Shown piece by piece: positions 39,123 through 50,657 of a stretch of 64,000 nt of DNA (the first letter of the stretch is position 1; every line of letters starts with the position of its first letter). The DNA lies in the IMG/VR virus record IMGVR_UViG_3300047095_000752, positions 181,226-245,225 of that record; one strand, written 5' to 3'. The translations under genes and the position numbers were made by a program. Below the pieces are notes generated by a model, which was not told the DNA's origin, did not search any database, and worked only from the letters and a program-made list of their open reading frames with translations.

Positions 39123-41720
39123 ATGCCATCATTAACATTTACACCAACAAGTGCCGTAGTGTCGGGTTCTGTAACGGCTCCAAATTCATCATGGACTAAC
39201 TTGTCTTATTTATATGATTTATCCGGGAGCCACACCCAAACTTCAATCACACTAGCACCGAACGCTGAGACCAATTATCTAATTATTAGTGGATTTGGAT
39301 CCGAGATCCCTGCTGGTACGACATTAACCGGTGTTCGATTTAATTTTGATGTATCTCTCGATTCAGTATCGGATAGTGAAAACGTGGCGGCTACCGAACT
39401 CTACCTTCAGATCAATGGTTCGGATTACGGACCAAACTTGGTGGCAACTGAAGGTTATCTAAATGATTTCGGTTATGGTAATGGGTCAGTTGGTGGTGGA
39501 GTTGGGGATTATATTGTAGATGGACTTAATTTAACTTTGGTTGAAAATTCCACATTTGGTATAAAATTAAAAATTAGAAATACAAACACAATAGAATATT
39601 ACAGAGCCTATATAAACTCTGTGTCATTAGAATTATTCCACTCAGAAGAACGTCCGAAATTCTTATATGAAGGGGATTCTACATCAGAAGTTCATATACA
39701 ATTACCATTATCGGATACCACATCAACTACAGTATTTCAAATATTACATGGCGCGGAAGACACCACATCACCCGGTACAAACTATAACTACTTCTGGGGA
39801 TTTGGATTCTCCGCTCCTAACCCAAATGATCCAGCCGTTGGTTACACACCTATAACTCAGATTCCCGGACACGGTAGTTATGATACCAACTATTTAGTTC
39901 CGACCTATGGAACAAGTTTAGATTCAACTGAGTATTGTTGTTATAATATAACAGACCATACAATGGCGTATGACACAGCCGGTCTTGTTGTGGGTGAAAC
40001 TTATCGTAGATCCCTTGATTTGATAAATATTAGATTACCGATTATAACAATTTATGGTCAATTATACGATTCACTTTATTTTAACATCGAAATAATTCCA
40101 GAAGCAGATCAACTACCACACTTTATTTATAATGGCGACTCAACATCTGAAGTAACAGTTACATTAGATAAAAAAGTAGGAGCTACAAATCCAACTACAA
40201 ACTTTTTAATACACCACGGTCCAGATCCCGACATAATTACTCGTAATCCGGATTTAATATTATCTTATAAAACATATAGTATGTATACTGATGTAGATTC
40301 GACTTCACTGGAACCGGTATATGATTTTGATACTTCTTCAATTGGTTCTGGAATTGGTGTATATCCAAACAACTTCTTAAATACATCTCAGGTTAGTATT
40401 GTTAGAGGTGTAAGTGAATTATGGGGTTCAAGTACTGATACAACACACACAATGGCGTATAACGTATCAAGTTTAGTAGCGGGAAATACATATAGACGCG
40501 CACATGTTTTGTGGTATGAGGCAACGGATGCAAGTGGAGTCGTGTATGATTCTGGTATTTATGACACTCTGTATTTTAATGTAGATTTTGTTGATACCAC
40601 GGTTCCGCAATTAATTGAACCTTATATTATTTATAATGGGTTTACTAATTTAGATGCAAATATTGTAATTGACTTGAATCCAACTGCAACTATACCAACA
40701 ACTAACTTTGAAGTATATCATGGTGATATTGTAGAACCTTCAGATGGAGACGATTTAATATATTATCAGATAGGTGGATTTTATACTTCACCTTTAGGTA
40801 ATGATACAACATCCGTCTACACACCGTCTGATTACACAGGTAGTTATACAATTGGTACTTATAATGTCAATTACTTAGATTTAACCGGAGTAACATGGGA
40901 CCAAACTTCCGGGGTTTACCAAAGTCATACAACAACAAGTCATACTATGGGATATGACGTATCAGGTTTAATTGCAGGAGAAGTATATCGTCGAGGTGTT
41001 GCTCTAACTTATTATGATACCGATACAAGTGGTGATACTTCGTCTGGAGCTTTAAGAAAAAGTATTTATGATGTATTGTATTTTAACTTAAATGTAATCG
41101 ACACGAGTCCCGCTCCATTAGCATATCCATATTATGTGTACAGCGCAGATCCGTACCCAGACGGCGAACCCGTTGATCCTGATGGTCCCGACGGTCCTTT
41201 ACTTGAGCCAGATTATATTGGGGATTCGACATCTGAAATTAATATAAGCATGTATCCATACGATTCAACTACAATTACATTTGGTATTAAGCACGATATT
41301 GCTTCATTGCCTCCGGGTGTACATGATATGGTAGATATATTTTCTTATATTTACGATATTGGTAGAGACACAAGTGATGCTGTTATATCCCCAAGTTGGA
41401 CTTCACTTGATCCCACCCGAGAAGTTGAATCTGGTATTTACGATAATAGACCAAAAGATAATTATTTTGGTTCTGGCAATTTGGAATTAATTGAATTAAC
41501 AATATCACCATTTGTCTTGGGTGGGGAGTTATTAGAACCCGGAACTTATAGATTGTATTTATCATTAACTTTAATGGGTTATTCATATTCTATAGATCCC
41601 GAAGATTTAGTACCAGATGAAACAAATTCGTTTTACGAAATGGATAGATTGTATATTAACTTAACAATTCTTCCAAAAATATTTAGACACACAGGTACAT
41701 ATTCAAATTCAATTGTATAA
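39123..41720 (+). CDS. large acidic Thr/Ser/Tyr-rich protein with four ~160-aa repeats; probable virion surface protein
   Basis: repeats begin P.F.Y.GDSTSEV and end YD.LYFN. Confidence 0.65.
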   Translation: MPSLTFTPTSAVVSGSVTAPNSSWTNLSYLYDLSGSHTQTSITLAPNAETNYLIISGFGSEIPAGTTLTGVRFNFDVSLDSVSDSENVAATELYLQINGSDYGPNLVATEGYLNDFGYGNGSVGGGVGDYIVDGLNLTLVENSTFGIKLKIRNTNTIEYYRAYINSVSLELFHSEERPKFLYEGDSTSEVHIQLPLSDTTSTTVFQILHGAEDTTSPGTNYNYFWGFGFSAPNPNDPAVGYTPITQIPGHGSYDTNYLVPTYGTSLDSTEYCCYNITDHTMAYDTAGLVVGETYRRSLDLINIRLPIITIYGQLYDSLYFNIEIIPEADQLPHFIYNGDSTSEVTVTLDKKVGATNPTTNFLIHHGPDPDIITRNPDLILSYKTYSMYTDVDSTSLEPVYDFDTSSIGSGIGVYPNNFLNTSQVSIVRGVSELWGSSTDTTHTMAYNVSSLVAGNTYRRAHVLWYEATDASGVVYDSGIYDTLYFNVDFVDTTVPQLIEPYIIYNGFTNLDANIVIDLNPTATIPTTNFEVYHGDIVEPSDGDDLIYYQIGGFYTSPLGNDTTSVYTPSDYTGSYTIGTYNVNYLDLTGVTWDQTSGVYQSHTTTSHTMGYDVSGLIAGEVYRRGVALTYYDTDTSGDTSSGALRKSIYDVLYFNLNVIDTSPAPLAYPYYVYSADPYPDGEPVDPDGPDGPLLEPDYIGDSTSEINISMYPYDSTTITFGIKHDIASLPPGVHDMVDIFSYIYDIGRDTSDAVISPSWTSLDPTREVESGIYDNRPKDNYFGSGNLELIELTISPFVLGGELLEPGTYRLYLSLTLMGYSYSIDPEDLVPDETNSFYEMDRLYINLTILPKIFRHTGTYSNSIV

Positions 41721-42756: not shown

Positions 42757-43833
42757 ATGAGTAAAGAAAAGACTGAGAATAGCTATATGATCGCCGGATG
42801 CGATGTAGGTACCGGGAATCTTGTTTTTGCAAAAATAAATAAAGATAATAAAGTTGAAGTTAATTCAATTCGTGATATGTTTATTTACGTCGAAGATGAT
42901 CACATTTCTTCCTCGGAAATGGCTAGCTCAAAGCTGGACTATATCACCCAAAATGATGATAATGGCGATCCAGAATGGCACGCTGTAGTTGGGGACGATG
43001 CATTAAAACTTGCAAATATTTTTAATTCTAAGATTAATCGCCCAATGTCCAAGGGTATGCTTAGTCCACATGAAGTAAATGCGTCTCCTATTATTACAGC
43101 CATGCTTAAAAATATTATTGGAGAAGATGTTAATGGTGGACACGTTGTATTTAGTGTTCCTTCCCAGCCATGCGATACCGGTGAAGTTGCCCCATTGCAT
43201 TTCCACACGGAGGTATTTAAACAGATCTTTAAGAATATTGGATTTACCGAAGTTGTTCCGCTTAATGAAGCTCAGAGTGTGGTATTTTCAGAATGTGGAT
43301 CTGAGAATTTCACTGCATTGAGTGCCTCATGGGGCGCAGGGCAGGTTAATATAGCACTCACATTCAAAGGATCACTATTGTTTTCATTTAGTATTGGTCG
43401 TAGCGGTGATTGGATCGATGAGTATGCTGGATCTGCAACTGGATTGATCCCAAATAAAATTACATCGATTAAAGAAAAACCTGATATGAATATTAAAAAT
43501 CCAGTTACAGCGGCTACTCCCAAAAAGGAAAGAGTAGCGCGGCAAGCAATTGGATTCGCTTATCAACAACTGATTGCTTATGTTGTAGAACATATTGACG
43601 AGCAATTTAAAGCTCACGCTGATAATATTGATCTTGACGAACCAATTCCATTTGTACATGCAGGTGGTACTAGCCTTATTCCCGGATTTATTGATGCATT
43701 TACTGAGAAGTTTAATGAACTAAAAGAATTTCCAGTTGAGATCAGTGAAATTCGACAAGCTAAGGATCCCCTTAGCGCGATCAGTGTCGGATGTTTGACC
43801 TATTCACAATGGCTTCAAAATAAGAAGAGTTAA
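42757..43833 (+). CDS. actin-fold ATPase (MreB/FtsA/ParM superfamily)
   Basis: GCDVGTGN (phosphate 1), NEA (connect 1), SWGAGQVN (phosphate 2), AGGTSLIPGF (adenosine), DPLSAISVG (connect 2). Confidence 0.85.
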   Translation: MSKEKTENSYMIAGCDVGTGNLVFAKINKDNKVEVNSIRDMFIYVEDDHISSSEMASSKLDYITQNDDNGDPEWHAVVGDDALKLANIFNSKINRPMSKGMLSPHEVNASPIITAMLKNIIGEDVNGGHVVFSVPSQPCDTGEVAPLHFHTEVFKQIFKNIGFTEVVPLNEAQSVVFSECGSENFTALSASWGAGQVNIALTFKGSLLFSFSIGRSGDWIDEYAGSATGLIPNKITSIKEKPDMNIKNPVTAATPKKERVARQAIGFAYQQLIAYVVEHIDEQFKAHADNIDLDEPIPFVHAGGTSLIPGFIDAFTEKFNELKEFPVEISEIRQAKDPLSAISVGCLTYSQWLQNKKS

Positions 43834-43837
43834 TATT

Positions 43838-44782
43838 ATGCCCGCAAAATTAACTCATGACTTTGTGAACTCTTATTATAGAGATCATGGATATACATTA
43901 GATTCCACATATAATGGAAATAAGAATAAAGATGACCTGATATGCCAAGAGGGACATAAAACTAAAATATGTTTTGATAAATTTAAAAACCGTGGTGATC
44001 GATGTTCCGAATGTTCTGGTAACGAAAAATGGACATATGAAGAAGTATACAAAGCCTTCAAAGATAAAGGTTGTGAATTATTAGAAACAGAATATATTAA
44101 TAATCAAACAAAAATGAAATACAAATGTAAATGCGGGAATGGAAGTTCAATAACATTAGGTAATTTTAATTCAGGGCATAAATGCTCAAAATGTGGCGGC
44201 AACGAAAAATTAAAATATGAAACTGTCTACAAAGCCTTCAAAGATCAAGGTTGTGAATTGTTAGAAACAGAATATATTAATACACTTACTAAAATGAGAT
44301 ACAGGTGTGAATGTGGTAATGAATCCATCAGTTCGTATAATAATTTTCGGAGTGGTAATAGGTGTAAGGAATGTGGGTTATTAAAAAGGACTGGCGCGAA
44401 TCACCCAAGATTTAAAAAAGATAGAACTAGAATGGATCGAACTAAAATACTATCGTTTGATTATAGAAAACTCCACATCTTAAATGACGATCCCAATTAT
44501 GCAAATCACGTCCAATCCAAAAATGTCGCCAAGACATCGGGTAATAGATGGGATATATCTGATTATACCGTCGATCATATACAACCAAGAATTGCCTTTA
44601 TTGATAATGATCTTGACATTAAATACGATTTAAAAATAATTAAAGAAATCTGTAACCTACGAGAAAACTTAAGAATAATACCTCAAAAAGAAAATGGATC
44701 TAAAGCCGGTAAATACAACCAAGAAGAGTTCATGGCTTGGTTCAATGAAAAGATAAATGTATATAACTTAAAGGAAATATAA
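43838..44782 (+). CDS. Zn-ribbon-repeat HNH endonuclease
   Basis: three C.LLETEYIN...KM.Y.C.CG...G.(R/K)C..C repeats; VDHIQP...NL...N..K. Confidence 0.75.
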   Translation: MPAKLTHDFVNSYYRDHGYTLDSTYNGNKNKDDLICQEGHKTKICFDKFKNRGDRCSECSGNEKWTYEEVYKAFKDKGCELLETEYINNQTKMKYKCKCGNGSSITLGNFNSGHKCSKCGGNEKLKYETVYKAFKDQGCELLETEYINTLTKMRYRCECGNESISSYNNFRSGNRCKECGLLKRTGANHPRFKKDRTRMDRTKILSFDYRKLHILNDDPNYANHVQSKNVAKTSGNRWDISDYTVDHIQPRIAFIDNDLDIKYDLKIIKEICNLRENLRIIPQKENGSKAGKYNQEEFMAWFNEKINVYNLKEI

Positions 44783-47101
44783 ATGCAAATTGTAAAGACT
44801 ATGCAATTGACAAATCAGTGGGTTGTTGTGATAATCAACTCCATGCAGGATGTGGTTAATGAAATTGGTAGATTATCGGGTAGTTCAACATACCTGAATA
44901 ATGTTAATCTATGGGCAAGTACTAGATATACAGCGACACCAAACTACAATGCCCGTAACGCCTTCCGTACCGTCAGAGACCAATACATTGCCCAAGCCCG
45001 TATCAATGTAGGTGAACAAGCATTAGACGACGCCACATCATTCACACCAAATCCCCTAGAACAAGGCCGGGTACTCGTTGGAATCAATGAGGATATTACA
45101 ACTGGCGGCCCTCTTGTCGAATACGTACATTACTGTTACTTGAAGGTACCACTTGATACAACTTCAATCTCCGTATTCGGACAAACAACCTCCGTAATCC
45201 TGAATGATGACCAAATCTCCAGAGCAATCAAGATAAATCAGGTAGGCTATCTGCCCTCATCACCAAAGAAGTATGCCTATATAGGAGCGCACATTTATGA
45301 TCACGGTCCGCTTACCATCGATGCGACAAGTTTTACTATTCATGATAGTAGCTCAAACGCAACTGTGTATACCGGATCGGTCACACTAAGAGATTCAAAT
45401 ACAATTCTTGCAAGTGGAAAACCATTGACGGGTGAAAACGTCTATCAGATGGACCTCTCGGATTTTTCAGGTATTGGTGAATTTTACATTAAAGTTCCCG
45501 GCGTGGGAAGATCTTGGAATTTCAAACACACACTCGATGTTTATGGGGAAGTATTCTACACTACAACCCGTGGTCTTTATCATCAACGTTGTGGATTACC
45601 TCTAAAAGCTCCTTATACTAATTGGCTACGCCCAACCTGCCATACGAAACCAGTCAAGGAATCTAAATTCGTTTCGTTCCCAAGTCAATTTACAGATCGT
45701 CCCGCTAACTATGAACGGTTTGATGTTTACGGTGCGACCACAGATCATAGCTCATTCAACGTGACCGCAGCGGGCGGCTGGCATGACGCGGCAGACTGGG
45801 ATCGTAATACTCAGCACTACACTTGTGTTTTTGATCTTCTTTACGCTTATGAAATGGATCCTGATAAATTCACTTCAAATCAATTAAATATCCCGGAATC
45901 ACCAACCGCTTACCCAGATATATTGAAAGAGGCGGAATACGGTTTACAGTGTTGGAAGAGATCTATGGACTCGCGGGGCGGAGTTTCCGGGATGATCGAG
46001 ACGAATACGCATCCGACACGCGGAGTTGACGGCAATTACGCATACTCGGTTAGAACTCGCTGGGATTCACTACTATTAGCCGCCGCAGCAGCCATGATGG
46101 CGGAATTAATCGCGCCATTTGACATGGCTAAATCGAATACTTGGAAATGGTATGCTATTAAAAGTTATAACTTCGGAAACAATCCCGCTAATAGCTTAGG
46201 AACTGTGACAATCCCCGCGAAGACGAACCGAGGACTTGGTACATCTTACACCTATACCTTCACGGAAAAAGACACGCATATTGAACCGCTCCTTGCTCAC
46301 GCTAAATCCAGATTGTATAAGTTAACAAGCGATTCCACCTATCTAACTGGACTTGATACTTTAATTGGAAAATTAAGAGCACCATTTAAATGGCCATATA
46401 CAAATCGTGATTACAGCGGATGGATTAACTATAGTTGTCTCGATCACGTGTCAAATCCAACTACCAAAGCTAATTATATTAAACTTTGGTTTACAAATTA
46501 TGCTGATGCGTTACTACCCCACGTTGCAGCCCAGCCTTATAGATGTACTTGGCCAGTTACAAAAGACTTCTGGTTGGATTGGGGAGCGAGTTGCATGACC
46601 AATGAGAACAGATCCCTGCTACTTTCATACAAACTCACGACTCAATCCAAGTATTTAGAAGCTGCAATTTTAAACATGGACTATATGCTCGGCGCAAATC
46701 CACAGGGTATGGTATACACAACTGGTTTAGGGCAGTCGTATCCTGCAATTTTACAGCACGAAACGAGTCAGTTTGATGGCATCGATGATCCAGTACCCGG
46801 AATTGCCTTGTACGGTCAAACCGGCGGCTCACACAACACACTACGCACAACAGTCTGGCAATCCCCTTCTCCGACGGGACAGGTGGAATTCAAGACGCCC
46901 GTTGTTCCTTTATGGAGATCTTGGTCCGCTCACCCAACCTTAAATACAAGACAGTGTGAATTTACGATCCAAGAAACAATGTCCTGCAATATCTTCTCGG
47001 CTGCAGCCTTAATGTCGGAGGGGTGGAGTCCTTCAAATACACTTAAAACCAAGACTCCAAAGACACTGGCGAATTTACCCGGATATTATTACTTACCGTA
47101 A
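44783..47101 (+). CDS. glycoside hydrolase family 9 with Ig-like CelD_N domain
   Basis: INQVGYLP, LYHQRCG, GGWHDAAD, DYMLGANPQGMVYTTGLG, CEFTI catalytic Glu. Confidence 0.88.
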   Translation: MQIVKTMQLTNQWVVVIINSMQDVVNEIGRLSGSSTYLNNVNLWASTRYTATPNYNARNAFRTVRDQYIAQARINVGEQALDDATSFTPNPLEQGRVLVGINEDITTGGPLVEYVHYCYLKVPLDTTSISVFGQTTSVILNDDQISRAIKINQVGYLPSSPKKYAYIGAHIYDHGPLTIDATSFTIHDSSSNATVYTGSVTLRDSNTILASGKPLTGENVYQMDLSDFSGIGEFYIKVPGVGRSWNFKHTLDVYGEVFYTTTRGLYHQRCGLPLKAPYTNWLRPTCHTKPVKESKFVSFPSQFTDRPANYERFDVYGATTDHSSFNVTAAGGWHDAADWDRNTQHYTCVFDLLYAYEMDPDKFTSNQLNIPESPTAYPDILKEAEYGLQCWKRSMDSRGGVSGMIETNTHPTRGVDGNYAYSVRTRWDSLLLAAAAAMMAELIAPFDMAKSNTWKWYAIKSYNFGNNPANSLGTVTIPAKTNRGLGTSYTYTFTEKDTHIEPLLAHAKSRLYKLTSDSTYLTGLDTLIGKLRAPFKWPYTNRDYSGWINYSCLDHVSNPTTKANYIKLWFTNYADALLPHVAAQPYRCTWPVTKDFWLDWGASCMTNENRSLLLSYKLTTQSKYLEAAILNMDYMLGANPQGMVYTTGLGQSYPAILQHETSQFDGIDDPVPGIALYGQTGGSHNTLRTTVWQSPSPTGQVEFKTPVVPLWRSWSAHPTLNTRQCEFTIQETMSCNIFSAAALMSEGWSPSNTLKTKTPKTLANLPGYYYLP

Positions 47102-47130
47102 AGTTATTAAATTCAAGTGTTATCATACAT

Positions 47131-47159
47131 TTGCCTTAACTCAGTTTCAATGGTATAAT
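47131..47159 (+). promoter_or_regulatory. sigma70-type promoter
   Basis: TTGCCT-17-TATAAT with TG extension. Confidence 0.6.
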
Positions 47160-47191
47160 CAATGTGAACTTAAACCAAGGAGAGACCTATT

Positions 47192-47932
47192 ATGTTCAAG
47201 TTAATTCGCAAATATATTGACTTCATATTCAAGACCGACCTAAAAAATTATGACAAGGATTATCGAGATTATTGTGGCGATATCGATCTGTATGAAAGTT
47301 GTTCTCGTGATCCATTTGTATTTATGAAGAAATATTTTCAAGATAACTTATTAATTAATATCTCTCTTTTGGATATGGATCACCTGCAATTATTGATTTT
47401 AGACGCATTTGTGAATAAACAAAAAATCATTGTAAAAGCTAAAAATTATAACCACACGACGCAGGTTCAAATCATCCTCACAGCTTGGTTGATGATTTTC
47501 TATCCAAATACTAAAATTGGTGTAATTGTACCTAATCAAATATTAGCTAAAAAATACATTGCGGATTTACAAAATGCTTTTAATTATATTAAAAAGGAAT
47601 ATTATGGGGACGCTTTTTTTGAAGTGACCGCCCAATCAATAACACTCACTAACAATTCACATTGTACAGTAAAGTCTTCTCGCGATGTCGATCTCAATGG
47701 TTTATTTCGTGGTATTACCTTGGATTGTATTTTTTACAATGATGTAAACCGACTTCAGTGCGTTGAAGAAATATACGACCTCTTCAAGAAGCAATATAAC
47801 CCAGAATACGTATTTATGTTCAACACAGACTCTAAGGAAATGCCCTATCATATTAATCCTAAGTCTAATGTATGGTTTGATGCTAAATTTAATTCAAATT
47901 CAGAATTATATCCTACAACCATACAAAAATAA
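47192..47932 (+). CDS. degenerate large-terminase (gp17-like) ATPase domain, catalytic motifs lost
   Basis: C.RDP..F.K.Y, IIVK, AWLMIFYPN.KI, I.L.N.S, RG.TLDCIF; Walker A reads AKNYNHTT and Walker B reads YND. Confidence 0.65.
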   Translation: MFKLIRKYIDFIFKTDLKNYDKDYRDYCGDIDLYESCSRDPFVFMKKYFQDNLLINISLLDMDHLQLLILDAFVNKQKIIVKAKNYNHTTQVQIILTAWLMIFYPNTKIGVIVPNQILAKKYIADLQNAFNYIKKEYYGDAFFEVTAQSITLTNNSHCTVKSSRDVDLNGLFRGITLDCIFYNDVNRLQCVEEIYDLFKKQYNPEYVFMFNTDSKEMPYHINPKSNVWFDAKFNSNSELYPTTIQK

Positions 47933-47972
47933 TATTATCGACAAATATGTATAAACATTAGGATTTGATATT

Positions 47973-48467
47973 ATGAACCAATTGAATAAAAATATTAAGC
48001 AACTTCGAGAAGATATAATCGAATTTGTAATTGATAAATCTGTAGACCTCGGGCTTGATGCTGCTCGTAAGGCGAAGGATAAAACCGTTGAAGTTATCAA
48101 GAAACAAGACTACACGGCAATTAAATTATCAATACAAGATATAATAAATGATGCGTTATGGAGGCATAAATCTAAGACTCAGCAATGTAATGATTTAAAA
48201 GACGACATCCAATATTATGTTTGTAAGAAAAGTATAGCTTATATGCAAATTAAGGAACTCCAGAACTCCGTGGGTAATTGTCGGAGAAATGAAAATCCGG
48301 TATTATGCCGTACAAGAGTATTAGAAAAAATTGTAGAAAAAAAGAATTTCATACTAAAATGCGAACAGCAAATAAATGAAATTAAAGTTGAAAATATAAA
48401 ATTAGACAATGCTCGTAGTCCGGGTAAAACATACTGGGGAAATGAGTACAAATCACTGGACGATTAA
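47973..48467 (+). CDS. hypothetical protein
   Basis: class B-like CGACAAAT at 47939. Confidence 0.55.
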   Translation: MNQLNKNIKQLREDIIEFVIDKSVDLGLDAARKAKDKTVEVIKKQDYTAIKLSIQDIINDALWRHKSKTQQCNDLKDDIQYYVCKKSIAYMQIKELQNSVGNCRRNENPVLCRTRVLEKIVEKKNFILKCEQQINEIKVENIKLDNARSPGKTYWGNEYKSLDD

Positions 48468-48484
48468 GACAATCGTATGGTATA

Positions 48485-48868
48485 ATGGATATAACAATGG
48501 ATAACGAACGTAAAAGTAAAATAATTGAGGAACTATCAAGCAATAGAGAAAATCTATATGAATTGCTTAATAGTAACATCACAGATCGTAAATCATTAGA
48601 AAAATTTAAAGTAACAGACGATGACTTTAAGAATCGACGTAGTAATATGACGTTGGCGGTGGAATTAACCAAGACTAAGTCGGAACTAATAAATGCCGAA
48701 CTTAACATTAGAAAATCTATTGACAGTTCAATAAAAACTGAGTACGAACTATTATCTAAGTTTGAAAAAGACTCGGCTAATAAAAAAGAAGCAAATATAG
48801 ATATTGCCGCCCTCGCCGCGCAGATATTGAAGTACCGTTCCAATGAAGAGCACACTAACAAAGGATAA
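48485..48868 (+). CDS. hypothetical helical protein
   Basis: 127-aa ORF preceding recA. Confidence 0.55.
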   Translation: MDITMDNERKSKIIEELSSNRENLYELLNSNITDRKSLEKFKVTDDDFKNRRSNMTLAVELTKTKSELINAELNIRKSIDSSIKTEYELLSKFEKDSANKKEANIDIAALAAQILKYRSNEEHTNKG

Positions 48869-48871
48869 AAC

Positions 48872-50095
48872 ATGGCTTCAAAGCTTAAAAAACAAAAAGT
48901 TGTAGACCTCACTGAAGATAACTCGGATTCGTTTCAAAATGCGTTTTCGAGTTTTCTATCCTCTACCCAAGGAATTGAAAATAAACTAACTGATGATATT
49001 AAGAAAATTCCAACTGGTATTGATTTTCTAGATGCCATTACGGGCGGTGGTATTCCTTGTAAGTTCTCAGTATTCGTGGGTAAGCCCGGCGGCGGTAAAA
49101 GCTCACTCCTTGCCAGTATTATTAAAGCCGGTCAGAAGAAATGGGGTAAGAAGTTTATTGCGGTATATGCAGACTCAGAAGAGTCCATGTCTCAGCAACG
49201 CCTAAAGGATTTGGGTTGTATATACCCAGTAAGTATTATTAATGGACTCACCGTAGAAAAGCTATTCAAATGTGTAGAGTCGGTATGTGCTTTTAAAGAA
49301 TCCAATCCCGAAAGTCTAGAGATCCCATCCATCATTGTTTGGGATTCAATTGCAAATACTCAAACTGAAGATTTAATGAATTCCGAAGAGTTATCGAATA
49401 CAGATGGCATGCGCCGCGCAAATATTCTATCCAAATATATACCAAAGTATGTCGACCGCCTAGCCAAGTACAACATCGCACTTGCCGCCGTAAATCAGTA
49501 CAGAGACAAGCCAAACGTCGGCGGTGGACCACAGGCTGCTGATATGCGAAACATGGGACAAGACGTTACAACCCCCGGCGGACACGCAGTCCAATATAAT
49601 GCATACTTAATGTTAGATATCGCTCAGGGTCCTATGCATAAAAATGATCCTTATGGGTACCCAATGGCACCAGTTACAATAAAAGCGATAAAAAACAAAT
49701 CATTCACATCAAACGTACCTATAGTATTAAATTTTAATCACACCAAAGGATTTTCTAACTTCTGGACGAATTATGAATTTCTAAAGACCCGCAAGTATAT
49801 TAAAGCTGGTGCCCGATGCTCATTAAATTCATATCCAACAGTAACATTTTTTCAAAAGAATGTCGCAAATCTCTATAATACAAATCCAGAATTTAAGGAA
49901 GCATTTAACGCTGACCTTAAATCTGCATTTGAAGAATTTATTAAAGAACACTCCGCCGAAAATATGGATAAAGATTCTTGGGATCCTAGTTCAGACATTA
50001 GCAATTCAACCGAACCTGTGATACAATATGATAGTCCTGATATGCACCCCGAAACCTTAGAAGAAGAGTCTGTGGAGTTATTCGATGTTGACTAA
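48872..50095 (+). CDS. RecA/UvsX-like recombinase
   Basis: IPTGIDFLDAITGGGIP, GKPGGGKS, DSE, IVWDSIA, VNQYRD, TPGG.A, IKNK. Confidence 0.9.
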   Translation: MASKLKKQKVVDLTEDNSDSFQNAFSSFLSSTQGIENKLTDDIKKIPTGIDFLDAITGGGIPCKFSVFVGKPGGGKSSLLASIIKAGQKKWGKKFIAVYADSEESMSQQRLKDLGCIYPVSIINGLTVEKLFKCVESVCAFKESNPESLEIPSIIVWDSIANTQTEDLMNSEELSNTDGMRRANILSKYIPKYVDRLAKYNIALAAVNQYRDKPNVGGGPQAADMRNMGQDVTTPGGHAVQYNAYLMLDIAQGPMHKNDPYGYPMAPVTIKAIKNKSFTSNVPIVLNFNHTKGFSNFWTNYEFLKTRKYIKAGARCSLNSYPTVTFFQKNVANLYNTNPEFKEAFNADLKSAFEEFIKEHSAENMDKDSWDPSSDISNSTEPVIQYDSPDMHPETLEEESVELFDVD

Positions 50096-50657
50096 TACTT
50101 CCGATGTAGATTTTATTATACCACTATTAAAACAAGAAAATAATTCAATTAAAAAGATAGCTTATAGTGGAACCCATGGTACTGGTAAAACTACATCGTG
50201 CTTCAATTTAGCTACACAGTGTAAATTAAATTGTCATAGTAAATCCATCCATCTATTAACTGAAGTTGCTAGTGAATCTCCATTTAAAATTAATAAAGAG
50301 ACTACAGTTGAAAGTCAGATGTGGATATTCGTAAATCAAATTTCAAGAGAATTAGAAAATTCACTTCGGTATAAAATATTAATATCAGATCGAACTATTG
50401 TTGATAATATTGCTTATACTATGGTAGCTGGATTCAAAGATTTGGCTAAAAATCAGTATGAATTCGCGAAGTCATTTATTTCAACATATGATTATATTTT
50501 TGTTAAAAAGAACGCTAACAACGATTTTCACTATGAAGATGGTATTCGGGACTCAAAGGATTCCCAGTACCGACAAGATGTAGAAGATGCGCTACTTAAT
50601 ATTTACATAAAACTGGAATCTTACATGGTAGCTCGAAATCGTATAATTTTTATTTAA
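50085..50657 (+). CDS. P-loop kinase (AAA_28 / NadR-like, possible dNMP kinase)
   Basis: YSGTHGTGKTT, EVA, SDRTIVDNIAY, DGIR. Confidence 0.8.
   Translation: MLTNTSDVDFIIPLLKQENNSIKKIAYSGTHGTGKTTSCFNLATQCKLNCHSKSIHLLTEVASESPFKINKETTVESQMWIFVNQISRELENSLRYKILISDRTIVDNIAYTMVAGFKDLAKNQYEFAKSFISTYDYIFVKKNANNDFHYEDGIRDSKDSQYRQDVEDALLNIYIKLESYMVARNRIIFI

What the first reader, a model, noticed from the sequence alone, without database searches (positions are those of the whole stretch)
47131..47932. Catalytically dead terminase-ATPase copy: candidate decoy for terminase-sensing defences
Seen: a 246-aa protein follows the T4 gp17 N-terminal ATPase scaffold, but Walker A (SRQxGK[T/S]) reads AKNYNHTT, Walker B DE reads ND, and no nuclease domain follows. 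The ORF is intact, has a good RBS and has a host sigma70-type promoter rather than class B. Established: Avs1-3 STAND NTPases recognise the large-terminase ATPase fold. Inference: a retained, early-expressed pseudo-terminase could be a non-activating decoy, or a regulator or competitor of packaging.
Basis: inference. Interest (0 to 1): 0.75.

Follow-up and report, generated by a model that had tools for sequence, protein, structure and literature searches.

The report
Conserved dead copy of terminase ATPase
An uncultivated T4-like jumbo phage from lake water keeps, besides its normal DNA-packaging enzyme, a short extra copy of that enzyme's motor core that can no longer use ATP or cut DNA; selection preserves it, so it most likely works by binding something, and what it binds is unknown.

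Summary
ORF 47192-47932 (+, 246 aa) is a real, distant paralogue of the phage's own large terminase (TerL). It matches phrog_5989 at E 5.7e-9 and its own TerL at 21% identity over 161 aa. Structurally it matches T4 gp17 at Z 20.1, with model residues 25-246 on gp17 101-315. It covers only the RecA-like ATPase core. Walker A (TerL KSRQTGAS) reads AKNYNHTT, Walker B D-E reads N-D, and there is no lid or nuclease domain. An intact 606-aa TerL lies about 190 kb away in the same 245-kb record.

It is not decaying. Eleven homologue clusters (236-269 aa) from freshwater metagenomes share a fixed gene order: GH9-like, this gene, two small ORFs, UvsX-like, DnaB, portal. pN is 0.05 against pS 0.72. A sigma70-type extended -10 promoter is conserved in several relatives. 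The P-loop stretch is one of the more variable parts of the protein. A family-specific N-terminal helix is the most conserved.

The closest published analogue is T4 vs.8, a stand-alone TerL-ATPase-like protein with intact motifs that activates EcAvs2. This family is not a detectable vs.8 member.

The decoy idea is untested and nothing here favours it. I favour a non-catalytic binding or regulatory protein, at modest confidence.

The parts
47117..47129 (+). Conserved 13-nt element GTGTTATCATACA just upstream of the -35 hexamer. Possible regulator site; function unknown.
   Evidence: GTTATCATAC is present at the same place upstream of the orthologues in L015 and L016 (protein identity about 30%). 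There is only one other full copy in the 245-kb record, G000:C1 about 140273, also upstream of a gene.
47131..47159 (+). Sigma70-type promoter TTGCCT-17 nt-TGGTATAAT (extended -10).
   Evidence: 10/12 matches, TG present. The -35 and extended -10 are conserved in L005-L008 while the spacer differs. Equivalent extended -10 promoters occur in L015 and L016. There is none in the lineages where the gene abuts the upstream gene. The same promoter type precedes the DnaB and actin-like genes.
47177..47182 (+). Ribosome-binding site AAGGAG, 9 nt before the ATG.
   Evidence: Sequence read directly. AAAGGA-type words are enriched upstream of genes genome-wide.
47192..47932 (+). CDS of 246 aa: a stand-alone, catalytically dead paralogue of the TerL RecA-like ATPase core.
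   Evidence: Purifying selection.
47192..47233 (+). Family-specific N-terminal amphipathic helix (aa 1-14, MFKLIRKYIDFIFK). It is absent from TerL and is the most conserved segment of the family.
   Evidence: Alignment A5. Mean column entropy 1.01 against 1.72 for the whole protein. Helix 2-13 in both models.
47438..47461 (+). Degenerate Walker A / P-loop equivalent (aa 83-90, AKNYNHTT, against TerL KSRQTGAS).
   Evidence: Ungapped alignment with the phage's own TerL and with gp17 SRQLGKT via profile A3. The stretch is more variable than average (entropy 1.92) and differs even between 91%-identical homologues.
47465..47536 (+). Best-conserved core shared with TerL: the helix after the P-loop plus strand beta2 (aa 92-115; L96 and W99 invariant in the short family and in TerLs).
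   Evidence: Alignments A3 and A5. Entropy 1.10 for aa 92-104.
47705..47713 (+). F-R-G motif (aa 172-174), with R173 ten residues before the Walker B position. It sits at the position of the conserved R-G of TerLs (gp17 AVRGNSF..IDE) and of vs.8.
   Evidence: It is retained in the window's subclade, P0003 and P0005, and lost in P0004, P0006 and subfamily B. Its equivalence to the trans-acting arginine finger of P74-26 TerL (R139) rests on my own knowledge, not on a test.
47720..47743 (+). Walker B strand equivalent (aa 177-184, LDCIFYND). TerL hhhhD-E reads ..Y-N-D, so both the Mg-binding Asp and the catalytic Glu are lost.
47939..47955 (+). Weak copy (CGACAAATATGTATAAA) of the phage-specific upstream motif GGACAAAT..TATAAA, just before the next gene. 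The downstream genes may therefore be transcribed separately from the pseudo-TerL gene.
   Evidence: Motif enrichment and list of sites.
47973..48467 (+). Context only: a 164-aa ORF of unknown function that always follows the pseudo-TerL gene and evolves at the same fast rate. It is a candidate partner; nothing shows that it is one.
   Evidence: Synteny. Identity 65% then 30%, in parallel with pseudo-TerL at 67% then 30%. No family match.
48485..48868 (+). Context only: a 127-aa helical ORF, conserved in all relatives.
   Evidence: Alignment A6. There is a weak language-model lead to T5-type small terminase (score 0.88), not supported by Pfam.

Best explanation
SHOWN. The gene encodes a stand-alone copy of the RecA-like core (the part equivalent to gp17 residues 101-315) of a T4-type large terminase. 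In every member of the family the Walker A lysine and the catalytic glutamate are gone. In the window's subfamily the whole P-loop and the Walker B aspartate are gone too. There is no lid subdomain and no nuclease domain. A complete TerL exists elsewhere in the genome. The copy is kept intact, in one genomic position, across a deeply diverged clade, under purifying selection.

INFERRED. It cannot be a motor or a nuclease, so it acts by binding: it is a pseudoenzyme. My preferred mechanism is that it is a non-catalytic regulatory or adaptor subunit of the phage's own DNA-handling machinery. It would use the preserved TerL-type surfaces (the helix after the P-loop, strand beta2, and in this subclade the R-G motif that in TerL rings points into the neighbour's ATP site) to dock on TerL or on a TerL partner. 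It would use its new, strongly conserved N-terminal amphipathic helix to hold a second partner, possibly the co-evolving 164-aa neighbour. Made from a host-type promoter at the head of the recombination/replication block, it would control when or where the packaging ATPase engages replicating DNA. This is analogous to the inert subunits of other ring ATPases.

The identity of the partner is a guess.
For: Homology and fold.

Loss of the catalytic motifs across 12 family members, with a graded series: subfamily B keeps R..G.TT and the Walker B Asp, while subfamily A has lost everything.

Intact full-length TerL with Terminase_6N and K-S-R-Q-T-G-A-S / I-I-D-E-T in the same record.

Purifying selection: pN 0.05 against pS 0.72 versus L006, and 0.23 against 0.80 versus L005. 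No stops or frameshifts in any homologue.

Fixed synteny (GH9-like, pseudo-TerL, about 160 aa, about 125 aa, UvsX-like, AAA_28, DnaB..., T4-type portal) in every long contig.

The conservation pattern is that of a binding protein, not an enzyme. The P-loop stretch is more variable than average, while the N-terminal helix and the helix after the P-loop are the most conserved.

R-G motif in register with gp17 and vs.8.

Pseudo-TerL and the adjacent 164-aa ORF diverge in parallel.
Against: No interaction was or could be tested here, because no complex prediction was available.

The R-G motif is lost in about half of the family, so it cannot be the universal mechanism.

The gene is far from TerL. 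It carries a host-type promoter that it shares with replication genes, whereas TerL would be expected to be late. A partner that is absent early weakens a TerL-docking role.

Synteny with UvsX/DnaB is weak evidence, because the whole region is collinear in all relatives.

The gene evolves two to three times faster than its neighbours over long distances (30% against 60-70% identity). That also fits an arms-race protein.

No expression data exist.
Confidence: 0.35

Rival explanations
1. Immune decoy or anti-defence protein. It would be an early-made TerL look-alike that occupies the sensor pocket of terminase-sensing defences (Avs1-3, Upx) without triggering oligomerisation, or that otherwise blunts them before TerL appears.
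For: Host-type promoter, conserved in three sub-lineages.

The TerL-ATPase core fold is exactly the part that EcAvs2 and Upx recognise, and stand-alone TerL-like proteins (T4 vs.8, Ksap1/2) are known to sit in the Avs2 pocket. The authors themselves raise an anti-defence role for such proteins (PMC13601566).

Loss of the nucleotide site removes the ATP-mediated contacts used for activation.

Fast long-range divergence combined with strict retention.
Against: No direct evidence of any kind.

The known TerL-like small proteins activate Avs2 rather than block it.

Without bound ATP the protein should also lose part of the binding interface.

Upx is modelled to bind an unfolded ATPase core, so a decoy could just as well trigger it.

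The known anti-Avs proteins (ORF55 ligase, ORF83) are unrelated to terminase (10.1101/2025.06.06.658234).

The gene is a fixed core gene in a collinear block, not in a variable accessory region.

The host, and its defence repertoire, are unknown.
Confidence: 0.15
2. It has been exapted into the replication/recombination module. It would be a non-catalytic adaptor that works with the UvsX-like recombinase, the DnaB-type helicase and the two small helical proteins (for example as a loader or mediator scaffold), with no remaining link to packaging.
For: It always sits at the head of the block (pseudo-TerL, two small ORFs, UvsX-like, AAA_28, DnaB), down to 25-30% identity.

It has the same promoter type as DnaB.

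It diverges in parallel with the adjacent 164-aa ORF.
Against: The whole region is collinear in all relatives, so adjacency is weak evidence.

A phage-type motif between this gene and the next suggests separate transcription.

In some lineages the gene is instead joined to the upstream gene, with no promoter of its own.

The small ORFs match no known mediator or loader family.
Confidence: 0.2
3. Weapon against competitors. It would be a dominant-negative TerL fragment that poisons the packaging motor of co-infecting phages or satellites, while the phage's own TerL is insensitive.
For: It is a truncated, inert ring-subunit look-alike made from a host-type promoter. Satellites are known to manipulate packaging motors (10.1101/2024.04.22.590561, listed, abstract only).
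Against: This is purely speculative. Its closest TerL relatives are the phage's own lineage, which is the motor it would be most likely to poison.
Confidence: 0.05
4. Decaying remnant of a partial TerL duplication, with no function.
For: The catalytic motifs are lost and the protein is truncated.
Against: The reading frame is open in all 12 homologues, which span 21-91% identity. pN is far below pS. Promoter and RBS are conserved. A new N-terminal motif is conserved.
Confidence: 0.03

Closest known systems
T4 vs.8 (phrog_1488), an uncharacterised stand-alone TerL-ATPase-like protein of T4-like phages, reported in 2026 to be toxic with EcAvs2 (PMC13601566)
   Same: Both are short (about 180-250 aa) stand-alone proteins of T4-type phages that consist only of the TerL-like RecA core. 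Both are encoded away from TerL among non-structural genes. Both have the F-R-G motif about 10 residues before Walker B. The tree does not separate the two from each other: TerLs are monophyletic against both, support 92/99.
   Different: vs.8 keeps an invariant GGRQSGK[ST] and IIDEP, whereas this family has lost both. There is no detectable sequence membership: no phrog_1488 hit and profile-profile probability 2%. The family is detectably closer to TerL than to vs.8. It also has a family-specific N-terminal helix.
Large terminase subunit, T4 gp17 type (Pfam Terminase_6N; PDB 2o0h, 3cpe)
   Same: Homologous RecA-like N-subdomain: Z 20.1 over 207-209 residues, with PHROG, BLASTP and phmmer hits. 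Shared elements are the C..DP..F helix, the Q of the adenine-binding motif (Q66), L..W after the P-loop, and the R-G motif.
   Different: No Walker A, no Walker B or catalytic Glu, no lid subdomain, no RNase H-like nuclease domain. It is 246 aa against 606 aa.
Ksap1 / Ksap2, non-terminase activators of Avs2 (PMC11564622; PMC13601566)
   Same: They are described as small phage proteins with a terminase-ATPase-like beta-sheet core, lineage-restricted and of unknown function.
   Different: No sequences were compared here. They are known only as Avs2 triggers in Dhillonvirus and Stephanstirmvirinae.
Inert subunits of ring or oligomeric P-loop ATPases, e.g. clamp-loader delta/delta-prime (analogy from my own knowledge)
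   Same: They are paralogues of a catalytic subunit that keep the fold, have lost nucleotide chemistry, and serve as structural or regulatory members of the assembly.
   Different: No assembly containing this protein has been shown. This is an analogy only.

Membership tests
Large terminase subunit (functional TerL, T4 gp17 type) | Homologous RecA-like ATPase core | tested here: met
   phrog_5989 E 5.7e-9; BLASTP to its own TerL E 8e-7; VIA-align Z 20.1 to gp17 101-315. It does not reach Pfam Terminase_6N.
Large terminase subunit (functional TerL, T4 gp17 type) | Walker A / P-loop able to bind ATP (here K-S-R-Q-x-G-x-[ST]) | tested here: not met
   It reads A-K-N-Y-N-H-T-T. The Lys, Arg and Gly are replaced, and the stretch is variable among close homologues.
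Large terminase subunit (functional TerL, T4 gp17 type) | Walker B Asp plus catalytic Glu | tested here: not met
   D-E reads N-D in the window's subfamily and D-N in subfamily B. No family member has the Glu.
Large terminase subunit (functional TerL, T4 gp17 type) | C-terminal RNase H-like nuclease domain | tested here: not met
   The protein ends at the equivalent of gp17 residue 315. The downstream ORFs are unrelated. There are only two TerL-like places in the record.
T4 vs.8 family (phrog_1488) | Sequence match to the family profile | tested here: not met
   No phrog_1488 hit for the protein or anywhere in the genome. hhalign of A5 against a 15-member vs.8 alignment gives probability 2%, E 0.02, although the alignment is in structural register.
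T4 vs.8 family (phrog_1488) | Intact Walker A (GGRQSGK[ST]) and Walker B (IIDEP) | tested here: not met
   These are invariant in the vs.8 alignment A7 and absent here.
T4 vs.8 family (phrog_1488) | Stand-alone TerL-ATPase-core protein of a T4-type phage, encoded apart from TerL | tested here: met
   T4-type portal and TerL in the same genome.
T4 vs.8 family (phrog_1488) | Activates EcAvs2 on co-expression | not testable with these tools
   This needs the co-expression toxicity assay of PMC13601566.
Anti-defence decoy of terminase sensors (hypothetical class) | Binds Avs1-3/Upx without activating them, and lowers TerL-dependent activation | not testable with these tools
   No complex prediction or assay was available. 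The known anti-Avs proteins are unrelated.
Anti-defence decoy of terminase sensors (hypothetical class) | Expressed before TerL | tested here: inconclusive
   A conserved sigma70-type promoter suggests host-RNAP transcription. No RNA run could be listed. Some lineages lack a promoter of their own.

The most novel reading that the evidence does not exclude
The family is a terminase-mimic counter-defence. It would be a TerL core that has shed its nucleotide site so that it no longer triggers Avs/Upx-type sensors, but still occupies or titrates them (or a host factor that presents TerL to them) before the real terminase is made. It would be the first case of a phage using a paralogue of its own immune-recognised protein as a decoy. 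It would also suggest what vs.8- and Ksap-type proteins are for.
Probability: 0.13. Interest if true: 0.85.

Novelty: new variant of a known kind. Interest (0 to 1): 0.5.

Why it matters
Large terminases were thought to be single-copy hallmark enzymes. Only in 2026 was a stand-alone ATPase-like paralogue (T4 vs.8) noticed, because it sets off the Avs2 immune sensor, and its function is still unknown.

This family shows that such paralogues can persist for a very long time after losing all nucleotide chemistry. Whatever they do therefore does not require ATP. That narrows the question to 'what does a terminase-shaped protein bind?'.

The family also offers natural separation-of-function variants: subfamily B keeps half of the site, and subfamily A keeps none. 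These can be used to test both packaging control and recognition by terminase-sensing defences.

For annotation, proteins like this should not be called 'terminase large subunit' or used as TerL markers in phage phylogenies.

Tried and rejected
1. Split terminase (ATPase and nuclease on separate genes). Rejected: a complete 606-aa TerL with intact motifs exists, and there is no second nuclease-like place.

2. Pseudogene decay. Rejected.

3. Membership of the vs.8 family. Not supported by the PHROG or profile-profile tests.

4. Origin by co-transfer with a homing endonuclease. An HNH/CapR-repeat gene of one family lies next to TerL (here and in L021) and near the pseudo-TerL (window, L005, L011). 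However, the genome holds at least 14 copies of that family, so the adjacency is not specific.

5. Timing of the duplication. The tree puts all sampled T4-type TerLs together (92/99) and does not resolve whether the short family arose in this lineage's stem or earlier. AU tests reject neither grouping (0.46, 0.17), and long branches are in play.

6. The neighbouring 127-aa ORF as a small terminase. There is only a weak language-model lead (0.88) and no Pfam support.

7. Relatives among isolated phages. There are none by tblastn or megablast. The IMG/VR scan returned only a full-length intein-bearing TerL.

8. Expression. No RNA run could be listed.

9. Defence, NCBIfam and Pfam libraries. Nothing relevant.

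10. T4-style late promoter TATAAATA. Not informative in this genome.

Full report
WHAT IS THERE

The window is the last 64 kb of a 245,225-bp linear IMG/VR virus record (CheckV completeness 78%). Its DNA is found in many lake-water metagenomes. G+C is 35%.

The finding's coordinates hold four features:
- a sigma70-type promoter, TTGCCT-17-TGGTATAAT, at 47131-47159;
- an AAGGAG ribosome-binding site at 47177-47182;
- one ORF, 47192-47932 (+), 246 aa;
- only short chance ORFs on the opposite strand.

IS IT TERMINASE-LIKE?

Yes, by four independent routes.
1. Profile search: phrog_5989 'terminase large subunit', E 5.7e-9. Pfam finds nothing.
2. The genome's own TerL. This is a 606-aa ORF at G000:C1:37776-39593 (-) with Terminase_6N, K-S-R-Q-T-G-A-S and L-I-I-D-E-T. 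It aligns with the short protein at 21% identity over 161 residues (E 8e-7), without a gap across Walker A.
3. An exhaustive phmmer scan of 1.84 billion cluster representatives found only six short relatives and two full-length TerLs. The better TerL hit is 48% identical to this phage's TerL.
4. Structure. An AlphaFold2 model built from the short family alone, with no TerL in the alignment, has pLDDT 79 and pTM 0.79. T4 gp17 is its best PDB match: Foldseek E 4.5e-8 and VIA-align Z 20.1, with model residues 25-246 on gp17 residues 101-315. An earlier model that included TerLs in the alignment gave the same answer. A language-model search gave only Terminase_6N clusters.

The protein therefore equals the RecA-like nucleotide-binding subdomain of gp17. 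It stops before the lid subdomain and the nuclease domain. The naming of those subdomains rests on my own knowledge of the gp17 structure papers.

IS IT CATALYTICALLY DEAD?

In the ungapped alignment, TerL K-S-R-Q-T-G-A-S corresponds to A-K-N-Y-N-H-T-T (aa 83-90), and TerL D-E corresponds to N-D (aa 183-184).

This phage's own TerL lacks the Lys after the Gly and has a Lys at the start of the motif. From memory, that is the same pattern as lambda gpA KSARVGYS. The conclusion does not change: the Lys, Arg and Gly are all replaced.

Among 12 family members there is a graded series.
- Subfamily B (P0007, P0010-P0013) keeps R..I-G-x-T-T and the Walker B Asp, but has Lys to Asn and catalytic Glu to Asn.
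- Subfamily A (the window, P0001-P0006) has lost everything.

No member has the catalytic Glu. The P-loop stretch is more variable than the protein average (entropy 1.92 against 1.72) and differs even between 91%-identical homologues. That is the opposite of a working ATPase.

IS IT DECAYING?

No.
- All homologues (236-269 aa, 21-91% identity) have open frames.
- Against the 91%-identical orthologue, 101 of 140 synonymous sites differ but only 30 of 598 non-synonymous sites do. The nominal dN/dS is 0.02, with dS saturated.
- Against the 67% orthologue, pN is 0.23 and pS is 0.80. At the short range the neighbouring genes behave alike.
- Over long distances the gene and the 164-aa ORF after it are the fastest-evolving in the block: about 30% identity over half the length, against 60-70% for GH9-like, UvsX-like and DnaB.

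The most conserved segments are:
- a family-specific N-terminal amphipathic helix (aa 1-14), absent from TerL;
- the helix after the P-loop together with strand beta2, where L96 and W99 are shared with TerLs.

An F-R-G motif ten residues before the Walker B position is in register with gp17 (AVRGNSF...IDE) and with vs.8. From memory, this is the position of the trans-acting arginine finger of P74-26 TerL. It is kept in the window's subclade, P0003 and P0005, and lost elsewhere.

CONTEXT

In every contig long enough to tell, the order is: actin-like (Pfam Volactin), GH9-like 771-772 aa, pseudo-TerL, about 160 aa, about 125 aa, UvsX-like recombinase, AAA_28 (thymidylate-kinase-like), DnaB-type helicase, several small ORFs, T4-type portal, prohead protease. 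The one exception seen is L011/L012, where an HNH-like gene rather than GH9 directly precedes it.

The promoter is conserved in the window's subclade. The -35 and the extended -10 are identical or nearly so, while the spacer has diverged. Equivalent extended -10 promoters stand in L015 and L016. In four other lineages the gene abuts the upstream gene and has no room for a promoter.

Genome-wide, the same promoter type precedes DnaB and the actin-like gene. A different, phage-specific motif (GGACAAAT, 2-4 nt, TATAAA) sits 20-60 nt before many genes, both metabolic and structural. A weak copy lies between the pseudo-TerL gene and the next ORF.

'Early' remains an inference by analogy with T4. 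No RNA run could be listed.

ORIGIN

A maximum-likelihood tree of the ATPase cores puts all sampled T4-type TerLs together (92/99) against the short family and vs.8. Those TerLs are the phage's own, P0008, P0009, T4, a cyanophage, a Microcystis phage, a Flavobacterium phage and an intein-bearing metagenomic TerL.

A single origin of the short family is not rejected (AU 0.46). Its grouping with this phage's TerL lineage is not rejected either (AU 0.17). Long branches make any dating unsafe. The only hint of a within-lineage origin is that the sole TerLs detectable from the short protein belong to its own lineage.

COMPARISON WITH WHAT IS KNOWN

Evans et al. 2026 (PMC13601566) report the following:
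- EcAvs2 is activated by the TerL ATPase domain alone.
- It contacts the terminase-bound ATP through a bridging ATP.
- Upx is modelled to bind an unfolded ATPase core.
- Ksap1 and Ksap2 are likewise terminase-like in fold.
- The authors speculate that such proteins may be anti-defence proteins.

I fetched vs.8 (219 aa; GGRQSGKS, IIDEP). It belongs to phrog_1488. That PHROG matches neither the window protein nor anything else in this genome. A profile-profile comparison of the two families is not significant (probability 2%), although the alignment is in register.

So this is the same kind of object as vs.8, a stand-alone TerL core in a T4-type phage. It is not a detectable member of that family, and it differs in the key respect that its nucleotide site is gone.

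The anti-Avs proteins catalogued so far (ORF55 ligase, ORF83) are unrelated to terminase. In the searches run here I found no description of a Walker-dead terminase paralogue.

HOW IT MOST LIKELY WORKS

What is shown is a retained pseudoenzyme. It can only act by binding.

I prefer a regulatory or adaptor role in the phage's own DNA transactions, at confidence 0.35. In this model it docks through TerL-type surfaces on TerL or a TerL partner, and through the new N-terminal helix on a second partner, possibly the co-evolving 164-aa neighbour. The reasons are that the gene is a fixed core gene of a collinear block and that inert paralogues of ring ATPases usually serve their catalytic relatives.

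The rivals are:
- an adaptor wholly within the recombination/replication module (0.20);
- a dominant-negative weapon against competitors (0.05);
- no function (0.03).

The decoy idea is not contradicted. Promoter type, fast divergence with strict retention, and the vs.8 precedent fit it. Nothing here favours it over the others, and loss of the ATP-mediated contacts cuts both ways.

VERDICT

This is a new, Walker-dead variant of the recently recognised class of stand-alone terminase-ATPase-like phage proteins. Interest is moderate (0.5). It would be high if the decoy reading, or a defined role in packaging control, were demonstrated.

Noticed in passing
window 42757-43833 (+): A 358-aa actin-like protein (precomputed Pfam hits to PF25216 Volactin on its orthologues). 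It is conserved at this position in all relatives (59% identity to the L011 copy) and is preceded by a sigma70-type extended -10 promoter. A phage-encoded actin homologue in a T4-like jumbo phage may be worth its own look.
   Followed up: partly
window 44783-47101 (+): A 772-aa protein with glycoside hydrolase family 9 and CelD_N Ig-like domains (Pfam E 5.5e-27 and 4e-14). It is conserved at 69-75% identity across the clade and lies directly upstream of the pseudo-TerL in most relatives. Its role (virion depolymerase or something else) is unknown.
   Followed up: partly
window 43838-44782 (+); G000:C1 about 39583-40584 (-) next to TerL; at least 14 copies in the record: A large family of HNH endonuclease-like genes with repeated CapR-type zinc-ribbon modules is scattered through the genome (27 matching places). 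One copy overlaps the start of TerL. The window copy is absent at the same site in L016, so it is probably a mobile insertion.
   Followed up: yes
genome-wide; in the window e.g. 22652, 27368, 29030, 31403, 38676, 53055, 57742 (+): A phage-specific upstream motif, GGACAAAT followed after 2-4 nt by TATAAA/TATATAAA, lies 20-60 nt before many genes, both structural and metabolic. Sixteen of 22 GGACAAAT copies in the record are within 80 nt upstream of a gene. It is probably a phage-specific promoter class.
   Followed up: partly
window 47117-47129 (+); second copy at G000:C1 about 140273 (-): A 13-nt element, GTGTTATCATACA, lies immediately upstream of the -35 hexamer of the pseudo-TerL promoter. 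Its core GTTATCATAC is conserved at the same place in relatives whose protein is only about 30% identical (L015, L016). There is one other copy in the genome, also upstream of a gene.
   Followed up: partly
window 48485-48868 (+): The 127-aa helical ORF two genes downstream has a weak language-model resemblance (0.88, a lead only) to T5-type small terminase clusters. Pfam scans of five orthologues give no support. No small terminase was recognised next to the true TerL either.
   Followed up: partly
G000:C1:37776-39593 (-), outside the window: The functional TerL of this lineage (and P0008, P0009, L022) has K-S-R-Q-x-G-x-[ST] instead of T4's S-R-Q-x-G-K-[ST]. That is, there is no Lys after the Gly but a Lys at the start of the motif, as in lambda-type deviant Walker A motifs (the lambda comparison is from memory).
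   Followed up: no
L022:2926-5697 (+) (IMG/VR contig, not the window): A related T4-type TerL of 923 aa carries a large insertion after the ATPase core. It has the look of an intein with a homing-endonuclease domain.
   Followed up: no
window 50085-50657 (+): The AAA_28 / thymidylate-kinase-like protein after UvsX has a weak match to the PADLOC model VakA (E 9.4e-6).
   Followed up: no
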